A stretch of DNA of 64,000 bases. Origin: Fimbriosthenelais zetlandica. Its lineage: Eukaryota. A program made the translations under genes and the position numbers. How positions within the stretch are numbered: the stretch's first letter is position 1; the number at the start of each line of letters is the position of its first letter. The stretch spans positions 4,092,001 to 4,156,000 of the forward strand of contig OZ365115.1 of assembly GCA_977030845.1 (NCBI GenBank), given 5' to 3'. The notes beneath the pieces are model-generated. The model saw nothing but the letters and a program-made list of their open reading frames with translations. It did not search any database and had not been told where the DNA came from. Positions 55,101 to 60,792 of this stretch are shown piece after piece.

Positions 55101-55636
55101 AACAACCATGAGGTTACGCCAAAATTAATAGATAATCTAATCAAAACGATAGGGCCGTAAGTGTTGCTAAAGACGGGACTCCACTGCTGCGACAGTGCTT
55201 GCGACACTACTGCGACAAAGGTGATGCTTGTGAAGTTGTGTAAGAATAAAATTTCTAAATTGTGATTCAAGTGTCTAAGGCCTTAAGGCCGTCCTCCAAT
55301 GGTAGGCTAAATTTATCATTGAAACACAAGCATCACCTTTGTCGCAGACGTGTCGCAAGCAAAATCGCAGCAGTGGAGTCCTGGCTTAAGATTCAAATCT
55401 TGAAATAATTGATCAACCTCTAAGTGTTTGGATATCTTTGCATGCAGACATACAGATATCAGCTTCCCAAGTTCCTGGCAGCTCTAGAGAGGTCGGGTGC
55501 AGACCCGCATGGCATGTTCCTTCCCAGTTGTCTGGAGAAGATTTTCTACCCCCATGGTCATCCAGGCAAACACCGTCACCAACAAAACACTGGAATGCTC
55601 CTGGAAATGAAGGATGATTCAAATGTATATTATTAA
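49189..55636 (+). CDS. EGF-domain single-pass membrane protein fused to a cytoplasmic L-gulonolactone-oxidase-family (FAD_binding_4 + ALO-type) oxidase, ~825 aa, 15 coding exons
   Basis: Exons 49189-49272, 49634-49688, 49877-50022, 50167-50383, 50559-50726 (EGF, phase 1-1), 51130-51288 (TM), 51390-51451, 51586-51831, 52046-52192, 52510-52677, 52846-53226, 53549-53704, 53908-54046, 54261-54421, 55448-55636. All GT-AG, phases consistent, 2478 nt. Oxidase motifs: FKNWA, PRSVEEVQ, VRATGEKHSW, TMGGVIAGACHG, CNLGLWGI, KPHWCK, DPHGMF. Confidence 0.82.
54531..55020. mobile_element. ~490-bp GC-rich intronic element with short TIRs and internal repeats
   Basis: CCTGATA...TATCAGG termini, subterminal GATCCACTT/AAGTGGATC, and repeated AATGTGCGCTAA / AATGTGGATC / CCGCCA motifs. 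Composition differs sharply from the host intron. Confidence 0.5.
55167..55389. mobile_element. Palindromic MITE-like element, copy 3 (intronic)
   Basis: GGGACTCCACTGCTGCGA...TCGCAGCAGTGGAGTCCTGGCTTAA, same family as 260 and 4387. It ends about 60 bp upstream of the last oxidase exon. Confidence 0.75.
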
Positions 55637-56488
55637 TGAATGTGACCTGGCTATCAAAACTGTTATGGCACTTTCATACTAAAGCATGACAAGACAGCGA
55701 CAATACCAATACTTATCACACAATTGTGTCTTTTTCATATTCTTCTTTCCATTTTACTATTATAATCTCAAAACATAGTTGTTACTACGTCTTGTTGGTT
55801 CTTTTAAATATGAAAGATCGATCCTGAACTTACAATGTCTGACTTTTTGACTGACTAATATAAGTATTGTATTTTTGTGGTGAATCATCTCAGAAAATAT
55901 TACCCAAGAATTGATATTAATGTGGTTTTATCTTTGGTCATGGACACAGAACTTATAAACTGCTTTAGCACAATAATTATTAATATTAAAAGTGCAAGTA
56001 ATATTAACCATAAATGGCCGTTTTAACGGTTGCCAATTCTTAAATAGGTGATCGCGTGAGAACTGCTGAAGATACCAAACATTTTTTAAATGTTTACAAT
56101 TCACAATGTTATCGTAGGTGTCTGAATATTATAATTTAGAAGGATTTTTTTCTACATATCATTATGGTTGTGACTTTTAATTTATTCCTGTTTTTTAAAA
56201 CATTATTTACCAAATCGTAGACGGAATTTGGCTTGACATTTTATTTTACTGTCTGGTAAAATTTAGTAAAAACAATGAACACCTTGTTTAAGACCATGTC
56301 TGGAAATAAAATGGATTTCCCAACTTTTGGAAGTTAAAATATCCTTGAGTTTACGCTTACACTAATTCTAAATCATCAAAACTGTATCAGAATGAATTAA
56401 CTTCGCTCTAAACCTCCCTAAACTTTGTGCAGAATTTTCGAGTACTGCTAAGCCGTATAAATGTGTAGTGATCCAGGGAGAAGCAAAA

Positions 56489-56558
56489 AGCAAGACGTGG
56501 AATCGAACCAAGGACCCTCACGTTCCAGGCCAGCGTCTTACCTCTAGACTACGAAGCT
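56489..56558 (-). pseudogene. tRNA-like gene/pseudogene with GGA anticodon loop (left copy)
   Basis: Reverse complement AGCTTCGTAGTCTAGAGGTAAGACGCTGGCCTGGAACGTGAGGGTCCTTGGTTCGATTCCACGTCTTGCT: A box, loop CTGGAAC, B box GTTCGATT, followed by TTTTT. Acceptor stem poorly paired. Confidence 0.55.
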
Positions 56559-56790: not shown

Positions 56791-58550
56791 GCCCATAAGC
56801 TCCAATGGTAAAATTTATTTAGCCCCCCGGACCCCTCCCCGGGCCCCAACCTCCACCCCAAACCCGGTGTCTACCCCCAGCACCCATCCCAACACCCTCC
56901 TAAAAATTCAGCCCGATCCTTTGCTTCTAACCTGTCTAAATCCCTTGAATTAATCAAAAGTGTCCCGCCCATAGGCGCAATGTTAAAAGTCACTCACGAT
57001 TACAGGAATGTGTGCCACAGAGCCGGTTTGTCAGTCCACTCCAATCGGCCTTTCTATACTTAATATGCGTTATTTTCACTCGAAACGACGGTTATGTATG
57101 TCTTATGACCTCTACTGATAAATACCAAAAGAGCAGAGACGTAAAGCGACGTTAACACCGATTTCTTCCAAGTCGACAAATCGGCCTTGCGTATACCGGC
57201 CTATAATTTGGCCTTTTAAAAACCTTAACAGCGCCCTCTCACTAAAAGTCGAAAAAGTTGAATAACTTCGTAAATAATGGGTCTAAAATTACAATTCAAA
57301 CGGATTATTCTTAGTTGGGAGACCCTTCAGATGTCTATATGGTTTTGGCTCCAATAAAATTGATTTAAAATTTCGGATTTTCGAAATGCACTGAATTTCT
57401 TCAATTAGCATTGGAGTCAATGGAAGGAGGCGCCTGAGCGCATGTGGCGACCCGAGATGTCCTAGCGGCGGAAACGTGAACTACTATGCTCCAGCCAGCA
57501 AAGCCAGCAGAGATTCCAGCCGGGATAGAGATTGGGGCTCGGGGCCGTAGCAGTAGGCCTAAACCTAGGTGGATGTCGGGTGTTGGATGGGGTGGGGCGC
57601 AGGTGGGCAGGGGAGGGTGTGCGTAAGTGATTGCTTCATCTCAAAGATAAAAAAAAAAGAAAAAAAAAAAAAAGAATCCCATGTATACATAATCCTATTT
57701 CACTCTAATAAGGCCTACAGCCAGGGCAGGAGTAGGTATCGATAGATTGACCATAGTAGTGTAGTTCATCTTTTTGCTGCTGCTAATCTCGAGTCCCAAG
57801 TCGCTCCCGATTGGAAGGCGAGACTTGTCATTCAGGCTATACTGGCTTGGGCATAGTAGTTCACCTTTTCGCCGCTAGGGCATCTCGGGTCGCCACATGC
57901 GCTCAGGCGCCTCCTTCCATTGACTCCAATGCTAATTGAAGAAATTCAGTGCATTTCGAAAATCCGAAATTTTAAATCAATTTTATTGGAGCCAAAACCA
58001 TATAGACATCTGAAGGGTCTCCCAACTAAGAATAATCCGTTTGAATTGTAATTTTAGACCCATTATTTACGAAGTTATTCAACTTTTTCGACTTTTAGTG
58101 AGAGGGCGCTGTTAAGGTTTTTAAAAGGCCAAATTATAGGCCGGTATACGCAAGGCCGATTTGTCAACTTCACGGAAATCGGTGTTAACCTTGCTTTAAG
58201 TTTCTGCTTTTTTGGTATTTATCAGTAGAGGTCATAAGACATACAGAACCGTCGTTTCGAGTGAAAATAACACATATTTAGTATAGAAAGAGCCGATTTG
58301 AGTGGACTGACAAACCGGCTCTGTGGCACACACTCCTGTAATCGTGAGTGATTTTTAACATTGAGCCTATGGGAGGGACACTTTTGCTGAATCCAGTGGA
58401 TTTAGACAGGTTAGAGGCAAAGGATCGGGCTGAATTTTTTGGAGGGAGTTGGGGTGGGTGCTGGGGGCAGACATCGGGATTGGGGTGGAGGTTGGGGCCC
58501 GGGGAGGGGTCCGGGGGGCTAAATAAATTTTACCATTGGAGCCTATGGGC
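56791..58550. repeat. Large inverted repeat (foldback): arms ~56791-57500 and ~57840-58550, ~340-bp spacer
   Basis: GCCCATAAGCTCCAATGG versus CCATTGGAGCCTATGGGC at the ends. Arms align throughout; 57175-57459 is the exact reverse complement of 57881-58165. Confidence 0.95.
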
Positions 58551-58593: not shown

Positions 58594-58665
58594 GGGGCAG
58601 GTAGTCTGGAGGTAAGACACTCGCCTGGAACGCGAGCGACCGGGGTTCGATTCCCCGTTGCTCAC
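58594..58665 (+). tRNA. tRNA-like gene with GGA anticodon, short variable loop (right copy)
   Basis: D-stem GTCT/AGAC, anticodon stem CTCGC/GCGAG with loop CTGGAAC (GGA at 58627-58629), T-arm CGGGG-TTCGATT-CCCCG, imperfect acceptor stem, downstream TTTCGTTTTT. Body resembles tRNA-Pro. May be a SINE head or pseudogene. Confidence 0.45.
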
Positions 58666-58883
58666 TTTCGTTTTTGGTATGTATGATTTAAAAAAACAAA
58701 TCAAGTATTTCACTTCGATTGATTTAATTTATTTAACTTTCATAGAACTGCAAAGAAAGAAATCCAAAGAAATATACATTTTAAACTAGTAGGCCTAATC
58801 TAAATAAAGGGATACAAACACTAGCGCCACCTACCATAGAAATTGCAAAAACTGCAGAACAAGGGATTCACAGAAGAAACAAT

Positions 58884-58956
58884 CACCACCGGTGGGACTC
58901 GAACCCACAACCTCTGGATTAGAAGTCCAGCGCGCTATCCATTGCGCCACAGAGGC
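58884..58956 (-). tRNA. tRNA-Arg(TCT), intronless, copy 1 (one acceptor-stem mismatch)
   Basis: GCCTCTGTGGCGCAATGGATAGCGCGCTGGACTTCTAATCCAGAGGTTGTGGGTTCGAGTCCCACCGGTGGTG, 73 nt. T:T mismatch at pair 4:69 and an interrupted T-run terminator. Confidence 0.85.
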
Positions 58957-59196
58957 CATATATTACCATGAGAGAGCTCCAATTAAAAGCTGAATGAAAT
59001 CAAAATGACAGAATCAGATCGATAGATCTTCAACAATAAAAGAGTAGGCCTATCAGTATCACATTAAAGTAAAATAAAAAAATAACAAGGAAGCCATGTA
59101 ATGATCAATCTAACTGTTACTCGTTCTGTCCAAGCACAGAAAAATATTTTTTATTAAATTAAACAAGAAAATAAATTTTTTTTTGGTTTAGGAATC

Positions 59197-59340
59197 ACCT
59201 CCCGTAGGAGGTTTCAAAAATTGCGAGTGCTGCTCCATATTTCAGGACAACACCGCGGGGTATTGGGTATAGTTTTCAACTAGCAATAACCGCGCCTCGG
59301 ATGAACCTCATTGGCTACAGTACTGCCACTGCGCAAAGCT
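59197..59340 (-). ncRNA. RNU4: U4 spliceosomal snRNA, copy 1
   Basis: Reverse complement starts AGCTTTGCGCAGTGGCAGTA and contains the kink-turn GCCAATGAGG...CCGAGGC, TTGAAAAC, CCCAATACCCCGC, Sm site AATTTTTG and 3' stem-loop ACCTCC-TACG-GGAGGT. 144 nt, colinear with vertebrate U4. Confidence 0.95.
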
Positions 59341-59663
59341 ACCTCAACCATTCCCAACCCAAGACCCAACGAGGTCGGACCACACATGAACATGGTGTCT
59401 GTACTTGAGGGCTTTCTTTAATATACATTTCTCTGATGTTGTTTTTATTTTTCACACCAAAACCCCTTCTTAACTATGTCATTTGAAAATGTTAATATAT
59501 CTCTATTTAATAGTAGCCTAGAGAAAAAATATTCAATTCATTTGGAACACAAATCAGTTCATTTTGATAATCAGTTTCAACCATTTGAAAGGGATACAAA
59601 CACTAGCGCCACCTACCATAGAAACTGCAAAAACAGAATAAATGATTCACAGAAAAAAACAAT

Positions 59664-59736
59664 CACCTCCGGTGGGACTCGAACCCACAACCTCTGGATT
59701 AGAAGTCCAGCGCGCTATCCATTGCGCCACAGAGGC
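59664..59736 (-). tRNA. tRNA-Arg(TCT), intronless, copy 2
   Basis: Same sequence with a fully paired acceptor (GCCTCTG/CGGAGGT) and a T7 terminator. Confidence 0.95.
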
Positions 59737-59978
59737 CATATGTCACCTGAAGAGAGTACCAATTAAAAACTGAATGGAATCAAAATGACATAATCAGGTA
59801 GATAGACCTTCAACAATAAAAGAGTAGGCCTATCAGTATTGATCACATTAAAGTAAATAAAAAATAACAAGGAAGCCATGTAATGATCAATCTAACTGTT
59901 ACTCGTTCTGTCGAAGCACAGAATAATATTTTTTATTAAATTAAACAAGAAAATGAATTTTTTTTGGGTTTAGGAATC

Positions 59979-60122
59979 ACCTCCCGTAGGAGGTTTCAAA
60001 AATTGCGAGTGCTGCTCCATGTTTCAGGACAACACCGCGGGGTATTGGGTATAGTTTTCAACTAGCAATAACCGCGCCTCGGATGAACCTCATTGGCTAC
60101 AGTACTGCCACTGCGCAAAGCT
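59979..60122 (-). ncRNA. RNU4: U4 spliceosomal snRNA, copy 2
   Basis: As copy 1, with one substitution seen (GAAACATGG versus GAAATATGG). Confidence 0.95.
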
Positions 60123-60450
60123 ACCTCAATCATTCCCAACCCAAGACCCAACGAGGTCGGACCACACATGAACATGGTTATTGTACTTAAGGGCTTTCTT
60201 TATTATACATTTCTCTGATGCTATTTTTATTTTTTCACACCAAAACCCCTTCTTAACTATGTCATTTGAAAATGTTAATATATATCTCTATTTAATAGTA
60301 GCCTAGAGAACAAATATTCAATTCATTTGGAACACAATTCAGTTCATTTTGATAATCAGTTTCAACCATTTGAAAGGGATACAAACACTAGCGCCACCTA
60401 CCATAGAAACTGCAAAAACGGCAGAATAAATGATTCACAGAAAAAACAAT

Positions 60451-60523
60451 CACCTCCGGTGGGACTCGAACCCACAACCTCTGGATTAGAAGTCCAGCGC
60501 GCTATCCATTGCGCCACAGAGGC
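60451..60523 (-). tRNA. tRNA-Arg(TCT), intronless, copy 3
   Basis: Identical to copy 2; T6 terminator. Confidence 0.95.
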
Positions 60524-60772
60524 CATATATTACCATGAGAGAGCTCCAATTAAAAACTGAATGAAAGCAAAATGACATAATCAGGTAGCTACACCTTCAG
60601 TAATTATAGAGTAGGCCTATCACATTAAAGAAAAATGAAAAATGACAAGGATGCCCTATAATGATCAATCTAGCTGTTACTCGTTTTGTTCAAGCCCAGA
60701 GCTCAGTTATACCGTTGAATTATTTCTCTATTTAATCAAACAAGAAAATGAACTTTTTTTTGGTTTTGGAAT

Positions 60773-60792
60773 CACCTCCGGTTGGAGGTTTC
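60773..60792 (-). pseudogene. U4 3' stem-loop remnant at the array boundary
   Basis: GAAACCTCCAACCGGAGGTG in the unit-equivalent position. Homology ends at the Sm site. Confidence 0.75.

What the first reader, a model, noticed from the sequence alone, without database searches (positions are those of the whole stretch)
58807..60792. Tandem array co-amplifying U4 snRNA and tRNA-Arg(TCT)
Seen in sequence: each ~780-bp unit has a full U4 gene and, 240 bp downstream on the same strand, an intronless tRNA-Arg(TCT), which in turn lies ~320 bp upstream of the next U4 start. Established: U4 is normally a Pol II snRNA, while tRNAs are Pol III/TFIIIC. snRNA-5S linkages are known in several invertebrates and tRNA-dependent snRNA promoters in trypanosomes. 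Inference: a U4-tRNA repeat unit in a metazoan is unusual, and the tRNA may serve as insulator or transcription-factor platform for U4. A conserved ACCATGTTCATG about 45-56 bp upstream of both U4 starts is a PSE candidate.
Basis: partly seen in the sequence, partly recalled or inferred. Interest (0 to 1): 0.75.

Follow-up and report, generated by a model that had tools for sequence, protein, structure and literature searches.

The report
Small U4 snRNA plus tRNA-Arg repeat
A worm (annelid-like) genome carries a real but small tandem repeat in which a U4 splicing-RNA gene alternates with an arginine tRNA gene. Most U4 genes in the genome have no tRNA nearby, so the pairing looks inherited by copying, not a new way of switching U4 on.

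Summary
On the minus strand of 58806-60792 lie 2.5 units of about 782 bp.

Its core, ACACCA at -58, recurs upstream of 11 of 15 unrelated U1, U2, U4, U5 and U6 genes in this genome. U4 has no TATA box and shares a 3' box with U1, so it is a Pol II-type gene.

The functional reading is not supported:
- Only 4 of the 25 U4 genes are tRNA-linked. A 17-copy U4 array elsewhere has no tRNA.
- Only 5 of at least 30 tRNA-Arg(TCT) genes are U4-linked.
- The three linked loci share spacer homology, so they are copies of one ancestral module.
- Only the two genes are conserved above the spacer level.

Best reading: two autonomous genes duplicated together, a new gene pairing within the known class of linked small-RNA gene arrays.

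I could not test expression, true copy number or conservation in relatives. The scan had noted another U4 gene in this genome, but not this array.

The parts
58806..60792 (-). Whole tandem array: 2.5 units of about 782 bp. Order along the minus strand: U4 remnant, tRNA, U4, tRNA, U4, tRNA, then 78 bp of spacer.
   Evidence: Direct-repeat families D1-D8 with 778-795 bp spacing. Genome-wide spacer matches mark the ends.
60772..60792 (-). Truncated U4 (nt 126-146, the 3' terminal stem-loop only) at the upstream edge of the array
   Evidence: Repeat family D4, 87% identical to the 3' ends of the two full U4 genes. Homology stops at 60792.
60451..60523 (-). tRNA-Arg(TCT), intact. A run of six T follows four bases after its end (60441-60446).
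   Evidence: 71.6 bits against RF00005. ARAGORN anticodon tct. 100% identical to 24 copies genome-wide.
60123..60450 (-). Spacer from tRNA to U4 (sp2) of the upstream full unit. It holds the CTCF-core-like 12-mer at 60390-60401 and the PSE.
   Evidence: 96.9% identical to 59341-59663. 85-88% identical to the spacers at the two other linked loci.
60175..60180 (-). PSE core of the upstream U4 (reads TAACCA, two mismatches to the genome consensus ACACCA)
   Evidence: Positional comparison with 15 independent snRNA gene upstream regions.
59981..60122 (-). U4 snRNA gene, full length, with the canonical Sm site AAUUUUUGA
   Evidence: 123.8 bits, model positions 1-138. Sequence comparison.
59962..59971 (-). 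3' box-like element (AAACCCAAAA) about 10 nt after the U4 end
   Evidence: An AAAC(C)AAAA element is present after every U4 locus and after U1 genes.
59737..59980 (-). Spacer from U4 to tRNA (sp1)
   Evidence: 90% and 77% identical to the other two copies in the array, and present at C1:16.7 Mb.
59664..59736 (-). tRNA-Arg(TCT), intact. A run of seven T follows at 59653-59659.
   Evidence: 71.6 bits. ARAGORN.
59341..59663 (-). Spacer from tRNA to U4 (sp2) of the downstream full unit. The CTCF-core-like 12-mer is at 59605-59616.
   Evidence: No Rfam family and no unusual fold (z = +0.48).
59393..59398 (-). PSE core ACACCA at -58..-53 of the downstream U4
   Evidence: GACACCA found with at most 1 mismatch within 8 nt of the same position in 11 of 15 independent snRNA gene upstream regions. 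The best of 300 shuffles gave 5.
59199..59340 (-). U4 snRNA gene, full length, with the canonical Sm site
   Evidence: 124.1 bits.
59180..59189 (-). 3' box-like element (AAACCAAAAA)
58884..58956 (-). Edge tRNA-Arg(TCT) with one substitution that breaks an acceptor-stem pair and a degraded first terminator
   Evidence: 67.1 bits. 99% identical to the family. Sequence read.
58806..58883 (-). First 78 bp of a further tRNA-to-U4 spacer, where the array ends. It includes the 12-mer at 58823-58834.
   Evidence: 89% match to spacer positions 1-76. Motif match.

Best explanation
This is a small, fairly old tandem duplication of a 782-bp unit that holds two autonomous genes.

1. A Pol II-type U4 snRNA gene. 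It has a proximal sequence element (core ACACCA) at -58, no TATA box, and a 3' box about 10 nt after the RNA end.
2. An ordinary Pol III tRNA-Arg(UCU) gene. It has internal A and B boxes and a T-run terminator.

The array most likely grew by unequal crossing-over. It is one of three surviving copies, on three chromosomes, of one ancestral U4-tRNA repeat.

Both genes are kept intact in every copy, by selection or by gene conversion with their many paralogues. The spacers drift. The linkage is therefore inherited by copying, and U4 transcription does not require it.

Shown: the anatomy, the shared PSE, the gene census, the common descent of the three loci, and conservation limited to the two genes. 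Inferred: the polymerase assignment, the mechanism of duplication, and that the genes are active.
For: Anatomy.

Census:
- 25 full U4 genes plus one fragment.
- 17 of them form an array at C10:50.90 Mb with a 582-652 bp period and no tRNA.
- Four solitary U4 genes also lack a tRNA.
- Only the two window genes, C1:16.7 Mb and C10:53.6 Mb have tRNA-Arg(TCT), 318-336 bp upstream.
- At least 30 near-identical tRNA-Arg(TCT) genes exist. 25 of them share only the tRNA itself with this unit.

Common descent:
- The linked loci align at 85-88% across the whole spacer.
- The C1 locus also keeps an upstream U4 fragment and the U4-to-tRNA spacer, so it is a decayed 1.6-unit array.

Constraint:
- tRNA identity is 100% and U4 identity 96-99%, against 85-88% for the spacer (Fisher p from 1e-2 to 6e-7).
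- The U4-to-tRNA spacer is 84.8% identical and the tRNA-to-U4 spacer 85.6% (p=0.89).

Promoter type:
- The PSE is shared by U1, U2, U4, U5 and U6. Only U6 adds TATAAATA at -30.
- The 3' box is shared with U1.

Genome habit: U1, U2, U5 and U6 genes and many tRNA genes also sit in tandem arrays here.
Against: - No RNA or read data could be reached, so activity of these copies and their true copy number are untested.
- Every intact U4 of this subfamily (4 of 4) has the tRNA at a near-constant distance upstream. The spacer holds a 29-nt invariant run longer than permutation expects (p about 0.009). Some functional tie is therefore not excluded.
- The window copies are two of only four U4 genes in the genome with the canonical Sm site. 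They may matter more than their number suggests.
Confidence: 0.7

Rival explanations
1. Functional coupling. The upstream tRNA gene, bound by TFIIIC and Pol III, helps these U4 genes. It may act together with the conserved 29-nt island that resembles a CTCF core site. It could serve as a chromatin boundary, hold the region free of nucleosomes, or block Pol II that reads through from the preceding U4 gene.
For: - 4 of 4 intact subfamily U4 genes keep an intact tRNA 318-336 bp upstream on the same strand.
- At C10:53.6 Mb, homology runs only from about 35 bp before the tRNA to just past the U4 3' box. That is exactly the two minimal genes plus their spacer.
- The invariant run is 29 nt (p about 0.009). 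Its 12-mer occurs nowhere else in the window (3 matches against 0.43 expected; the three are copies of one another).
- tRNA genes and CTCF act as boundaries in other systems (PMC4041453, PMC12409998).
Against: - 21 of 25 U4 genes do without a tRNA, including the tighter 17-copy array.
- The linked loci are one event by descent, so the constant spacing is inherited.
- The spacer as a whole is no better conserved than the neutral-looking U4-to-tRNA spacer.
- No distal motif is shared with other snRNA genes.
- The CTCF match was noticed after the fact, against a consensus recalled from memory.
Confidence: 0.15
2. Silent relic. The array is a decaying leftover whose U4 copies are no longer used. 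The 17-copy array or the solitary genes supply U4.
For: - The array has only 2.5 units, and its edges are truncated or damaged.
- The upstream U4 has two mismatches in the PSE core.
- The sister loci on C1 and C10 are visibly decayed.
Against: - Both U4 genes score among the best in the genome.
- They keep the canonical Sm site that the 17-copy array lacks.
- They are 99.3% identical to each other, while their spacers have diverged 3-17%.
- The PSE and 3' box are present.
- The internal tRNAs are identical to the main family and have good terminators.
Confidence: 0.1
3. Assembly artefact: one unit wrongly expanded, or a much larger array collapsed.
For: Tandem repeats are prone to mis-assembly, and no read data could be examined.
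Against: - The units differ by 3-17% and by many indels.
- The array has unique flanks and distinct partial units at both edges.
- There is no gap nearby.

Expansion from a single unit is thus essentially excluded. Collapse of identical extra units cannot be excluded.
Confidence: 0.03

Closest known systems
Tandem arrays that link different small-RNA gene families. Examples: 5S rDNA with U1, U2 or U5 in oysters, crustaceans, fish and a coral; 5S with tRNA in mussels; U2-U5 in fish (PMC8167085, PMC3464664).
   Same: Head-to-tail repeat units of about 1 kb or less. Each unit carries two unrelated small-RNA genes with their own promoters, mixing Pol II and Pol III genes.
   Different: - The pairing U4 with tRNA-Arg was not found in any paper searched.
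- The array is tiny (2.5 units) and not homogenised.
- It is one of three dispersed remnants, not the main locus of either family.
Euglena U3 snoRNA genes linked to tRNA-Arg genes in a minority of copies; Tetrahymena U3 with an upstream, same-strand tRNA-Lys about 500 bp away (PMC2784804).
   Same: Only a subset of a multi-copy small-RNA gene family has a neighbouring tRNA gene a few hundred bp away. The authors concluded that any promoter role must be limited, because most copies are unlinked. The same logic applies here.
   Different: The organisms are protists, the RNA is U3, and the Euglena tRNAs are convergent and downstream. Here the tRNA is on the same strand and the pair is tandemly repeated.
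Trypanosomatid snRNA, U3 and 7SL genes that depend on an upstream tRNA gene (PMC4950102, PMC2784804).
   Same: A tRNA gene lies upstream of an snRNA gene.
   Different: - In trypanosomatids the tRNA is divergent, lies 93-105 bp away, is needed for Pol III transcription, and accompanies essentially all such genes.
- Here it is on the same strand, about 320 bp away. The U4 gene has a metazoan-type PSE and 3' box, and 84% of U4 genes lack it.
Human 1q23.3 tRNA tandem repeat with a conserved CTCF site (PMC4041453).
   Same: A tandem repeat containing tRNA genes in which a short CTCF-like sequence is the best-kept non-genic stretch.
   Different: The human units are 7.3 kb, carry no snRNA gene, and CTCF binding was shown by experiment. 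Here the resemblance is a sequence match only.
ncRNA tandem arrays of the hydroid Hydractinia (PMC11067881).
   Same: Many snRNA and tRNA genes of a marine invertebrate sit in evenly spaced tandem arrays. U1, U2, U5 and U6 are arrayed.
   Different: In Hydractinia U4 is the one major snRNA not reported in arrays. Here U4 is arrayed, but apart from the other four.

Membership tests
U4 spliceosomal snRNA gene (Rfam RF00015), Pol II type | Full-length match to the U4 covariance model above the gathering score | tested here: met
   124.1 and 123.8 bits against a cut-off of 46, model positions 1-138.
U4 spliceosomal snRNA gene (Rfam RF00015), Pol II type | Sm site followed by a 3' stem-loop, and stems maintained across paralogues | tested here: met
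   AAUUUUUGA at nt 119-127. Two central-stem pairs show compensatory double changes among the genome's U4 variants.
U4 spliceosomal snRNA gene (Rfam RF00015), Pol II type | PSE at about -55 shared with the species' other snRNA genes; no TATA box at -30 (a TATA box marks Pol III snRNA genes) | tested here: met
   ACACCA at -58 in 11 of 15 independent snRNA gene upstream regions, against a maximum of 5 in shuffles. Of the 17 upstream regions examined, U6 has TATAAATA at -30 and the solitary U4 at L020 has a TATA-like TATATAAG near -32; neither window U4 gene has a TATA box.
U4 spliceosomal snRNA gene (Rfam RF00015), Pol II type | 3' box shortly after the RNA end | tested here: met
   AAAC(C)AAAA lies 8-12 nt downstream at all U4 loci and at U1 loci. 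It was identified by conservation only.
U4 spliceosomal snRNA gene (Rfam RF00015), Pol II type | Transcribed, with the RNA incorporated into snRNPs | not testable with these tools
Cytoplasmic tRNA-Arg(UCU) gene | Cloverleaf with anticodon TCT; A box and B box; T-run terminator | tested here: met
   - 71.6 bits against Rfam; ARAGORN anticodon tct.
- A box TGGCGCAATGG and B box GGTTCGAGTCC, read.
- T6 and T7 runs 4 nt downstream of the two internal copies.
- The edge copy has a broken acceptor-stem pair and no adjacent T4 run.
Linked small-RNA multigene tandem arrays (5S-snRNA type) | Head-to-tail repeats, each with two or more different small-RNA genes | tested here: met
Linked small-RNA multigene tandem arrays (5S-snRNA type) | High copy number with concerted evolution of whole units | tested here: not met
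   Only 2.5 units. Spacers are 83-97% identical. True copy number was not checked with reads.
Trypanosomatid-type tRNA-dependent snRNA promoter | Divergent tRNA about 95-105 bp upstream, found at essentially all such genes, with the snRNA made by Pol III | tested here: not met
   Same strand, 324-329 bp away in the window and 318-336 bp across all linked loci. 21 of 25 U4 genes lack it. The layout is PSE plus 3' box, with no TATA box and no T-run at the U4 end.

The most novel reading that the evidence does not exclude
The tRNA-Arg gene and the conserved 29-nt CTCF-like island form a working upstream boundary or roadblock module. The module would serve the subclass of U4 genes that keeps the canonical Sm site. 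That would be an animal counterpart, acting through chromatin, of the tRNA-assisted snRNA genes of trypanosomatids. It would also tie in with the separate handling of U4 in this genome, where U1, U2, U5 and U6 share one 4.1-kb repeat and U4 is arrayed apart.
Probability: 0.1. Interest if true: 0.65.

Novelty: new member of a known kind. Interest (0 to 1): 0.3.

Why it matters
Linked tandem arrays of small-RNA genes are used as cytogenetic and evolutionary markers. They also raise the question of whether neighbouring Pol II and Pol III genes influence each other.

This locus adds a pairing (U4 with tRNA-Arg) that I could not find described. More usefully, it comes with an internal control that argues against over-reading it: the same genome has 21 U4 genes without the tRNA.

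The by-products may be worth more than the array itself:
- a PSE consensus for this annelid-like genome;
- a full U4 gene census with three structurally compensated variants and differing Sm sites;
- a composite U1-U2-U5-U6 repeat that leaves U4 out.

Tried and rejected
- **Reads.** Because no reason was given and the message said to go on with other tools, I continued to use other tools on this stretch by reference. I flag that here.
- **Synteny in relatives.** An exon ORF of the neighbouring GULO-like gene found no homologue.
- **Spurious-ORF trick.** An ORF reading antisense through spacer plus tRNA found only the antisense tRNA part, in unrelated metagenomic eukaryote contigs. Those contigs hold no U4. 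The genome search states that this genome has no relatives in its collection.
- **Hidden RNA gene in the spacer.** No Rfam match up to E=5, and fold z = +0.48.
- **Shared distal enhancer motif with other snRNA genes.** Only AT-rich words, within the range of shuffles.
- **Stronger constraint on the U4 upstream spacer.** BLAST figures first suggested it (85% against 66%). It disappeared once substitutions were counted apart from indels and the matching unit was used (85.6% against 84.8%, p=0.89).
- **Transposon-borne unit (Dada or Helitron type).** No ORF, terminal inverted repeat or target duplication at the module ends. Dada elements encode a protein and insert inside the target gene (PMC8869645).
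- **Trypanosome-type promoter.** Rejected on orientation, distance and census.
- **Array lying in an intron of the GULO-like gene.** Rejected. That gene is on the plus strand and ends at 55636, about 3.2 kb before the array.
Full report
**What is there.**

Rfam finds two full-length U4 genes on the minus strand, at 59199-59340 and 59981-60122 (124.1 and 123.8 bits against a cut-off of 46).

Rfam and ARAGORN find three intronless tRNA-Arg(TCT) genes on the same strand, at 58884-58956, 59664-59736 and 60451-60523.

Direct-repeat analysis gives units of 780-787 bp. Read along the minus strand, the array runs as follows:
- a U4 remnant, nt 126-146 only, at 60772-60792;
- then spacer, tRNA, spacer, U4, twice over;
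- then spacer, tRNA and the first 78 bp of the next spacer, ending at 58806.

U4 end to tRNA start is 245 bp. tRNA end to the next U4 start is 324-329 bp.

The two internal tRNAs are identical to the main genomic family. Runs of 6-7 T follow four bases after their ends. The edge copy has one change that breaks an acceptor-stem pair and has lost its adjacent T-run.

The units are clearly distinct copies:
- tRNA-to-U4 spacer, 96.9% identical;
- U4-to-tRNA spacers, 83-92.5% identical, with many indels.

One unit mis-assembled into several is therefore excluded. The only run of N in the window is 12 kb away.

**Promoter and gene type.**

I compared upstream regions of U1, U2, U5 and U6 genes and of U4 loci with unrelated flanks.
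- The conserved core is ACACCA at -58..-53. GACACCA occurs, with at most 1 mismatch and within 8 nt of the same position, in 11 of 15 independent upstream regions. The best of 300 shuffles gave 5.
- U6 has the element a little further upstream, plus TATAAATA at -30. The window U4 genes have no TATA box.
- An AAAC(C)AAAA element lies about 10 nt after every U4 gene and after U1 genes.

This is the layout of a Pol II-type snRNA gene. The polymerase itself is inferred, not shown. The upstream U4 copy has two mismatches in the core (TAACCA), which is within the variation seen in other genes.

**Census.**

The window is G000:C25:4092001-4156000 in a 447-Mb assembly. Earlier notes of this scan take it for an annelid.

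U4:
- The genome has 25 full-length U4 genes and one fragment.
- Seventeen form an array at C10:50898759-50908630, with periods of 582-652 bp (mostly alternating 586 and 652) and no tRNA.
- Four solitary genes (C13, C1:57.47 Mb, C25:15.27 Mb, C11) also have no tRNA within 1.5 kb.
- Only C1:16708535 and C10:53608617 resemble the window. Each has a tRNA-Arg(TCT) 336 and 318 bp upstream on the same strand.

tRNA-Arg(TCT):
- At least 30 near-identical copies exist.
- Five are U4-linked.
- The others share only the tRNA and a few flanking bases with this unit.

So 16% of U4 genes and about 17% of these tRNA genes are linked.

**The linkage is one event.**

The three linked loci align across the whole tRNA-to-U4 spacer, at 85% and 88% to the window. 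That spacer occurs nowhere else in the genome.

The C1 locus also keeps a U4 fragment (from nt 52) and the U4-to-tRNA spacer upstream, plus part of that spacer downstream. It is a decayed array of about 1.6 units.

At C10:53.6 Mb, homology runs only from about 35 bp before the tRNA to about 40 bp after U4.

The constant spacing and orientation are therefore inherited. They are not independent evidence of function.

**What is under constraint.**

| Segment | Identity between the window and the two other linked loci |
|---|---|
| tRNA | 100% |
| U4 | 96-99% |
| tRNA-to-U4 spacer | 85.6-88% |

Both genes are significantly better kept than the spacer (Fisher p between 1e-2 and 6e-7). At spacer-level divergence, a 73-nt stretch without a single change would be very unlikely. 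Both genes are thus maintained, by selection or by conversion with their paralogues.

The U4-to-tRNA spacer (84.8%) and the tRNA-to-U4 spacer (85.6%) do not differ (p=0.89). An apparent contrast in the BLAST figures came from indels and from the choice of unit.

One stretch stands out. A 29-nt run in the spacer, at about -281 to -253, is invariant in all four copies. That is longer than permutation of the columns gives (p about 0.009). It contains GTAGGTGGCGCT, which fits 12 of the 15 positions of the vertebrate CTCF consensus as I recall it. The 12-letter pattern has 0.43 expected matches in the window and three observed, all in the array and all copies of one another. It is not a general feature of the snRNA loci fetched. 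This is a lead noticed after the fact, not a test.

The spacer holds no Rfam family, has no unusual fold, and shares no distal motif with other snRNA genes.

**U4 variants.**

Nucleotides 1-84 are almost invariant in all 25 genes. The central stem-loop comes in three types, linked by compensatory double changes at two pairs (U-A to C-G, and U-G to G-C). All three types have therefore been under structural selection.

The Sm site differs among the genes:
- AAUUUUUGA in the two window genes and the solitary genes on C13 and C1:57.47 Mb;
- AAUUUUUAA in the 17-copy array and at C25:15.27 Mb;
- AAUUUUUUA in the C1:16.7 Mb, C10:53.6 Mb and C11 genes.

What this does to snRNP assembly is unknown to me. 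It means the window genes are two of only four with the textbook site.

**Context in this genome.**

Tandem arrays of small-RNA genes are the rule here.
- U2, U5 and U1 (one strand) and U6 (the other strand) share a 4116-bp unit repeated at least 15 times on C34 and C35.
- U1-U5 and U1-U5-U2 arrays lie on C1, C14, C19 and C22.
- None of these contains U4 or a tRNA. Only one solitary U2 has tRNAs, about 0.9 kb away.
- Earlier notes of this scan describe many tRNA arrays. One case concluded that a constant tRNA-to-gene distance came from copying the spacer together with the gene.

**Comparison with what is known.**

- Linked arrays of 5S with U1, U2 or U5, of 5S with tRNA, and of U2 with U5 are described in molluscs, crustaceans, fish and a coral (PMC8167085, PMC3464664).
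- A minority of Euglena U3 genes are linked to tRNA-Arg genes. A Tetrahymena U3 has a same-strand tRNA about 500 bp upstream. The authors draw the same cautious conclusion as I do (PMC2784804).
- Trypanosomatid snRNA genes need a divergent tRNA 93-105 bp upstream and are made by Pol III (PMC4950102, PMC2784804). This locus fails every defining feature of that system.
- A human tRNA tandem repeat keeps a CTCF site as its only conserved non-genic sequence (PMC4041453).
- In Hydractinia, U1, U2, U5 and U6, but not U4, are reported in arrays (PMC11067881).
- Six searches found no report of a U4-tRNA unit in an animal. The library lacks most subscription journals, including the main survey of metazoan snRNA genes (Marz et al. 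2008, cited in PMC3464664). I did not try to open that paper.

**Verdict.**

The unit is best read as two independent genes duplicated together. It is one of three remnants of an old U4-tRNA repeat, in a genome that habitually arrays its small-RNA genes.

A chromatin or roadblock role for the tRNA and the conserved island is possible but unsupported. I give it about 15%.

Not tested, for lack of data: expression, true copy number, and presence of the linkage in other species.

Noticed in passing
G000:C34:1-25053 and C35:604202-648288 (loci L065, L066, L067, L078, L079, L086-L090): A composite 4116-bp tandem repeat carries U2, U5 and U1 on one strand and U6 on the other, in at least 15 units. 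U4 is the only major spliceosomal snRNA left out. Further U1-U5 and U1-U5-U2 arrays lie on C1, C14, C19 and C22.
   Followed up: partly
G000:C10:50898759-50908630 (L005-L017, L019, L022, L024, L025): A 17-copy U4 array with periods of 582-652 bp (mostly alternating 586 and 652). Twelve copies are identical. Its Sm site reads AAUUUUUAA in place of the canonical AAUUUUUGA. Its central stem differs from the window type by a compensated pair.
   Followed up: partly
L020 (G000:C25:15274847-15274988, minus strand): A solitary U4 gene, noted earlier as lying in intron 1 of a GULO gene. It has a TATA-like TATATAAG at about -32 as well as the PSE, and the octamer ATGCAAAT at -97. PSE plus TATA is the Pol III-type layout that U6 shows in this genome. 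The window array also lies 3.2 kb from a GULO-like gene, which may be coincidence.
   Followed up: no
window 58594-58665 (+) and 56488-56558 (-): The 'tRNA-Ser(GGA)' call next to the array (48.6 bits, no long variable arm) is the head of a dispersed tRNA-derived repeat. A first look gave 927 candidates in the genome, at 89-94% identity. With a weaker tRNA-like hit on the other side, it caps the 1.8-kb palindrome at 56791-58550, facing outward.
   Followed up: partly
window 58823-58834, 59605-59616, 60390-60401 (-): GTAGGTGGCGCT lies inside the longest invariant run of the tRNA-to-U4 spacer. It fits the core of the vertebrate CTCF consensus as recalled from memory. It also occurs in the same place at the C1 and C10 sister loci.
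   Followed up: partly
window 58437-58517: A G-rich degenerate repeat (TTGGGGTGGG-like, 12-nt period) lies at the end of the palindrome arm, just before the SINE-like tRNA head.
   Followed up: no
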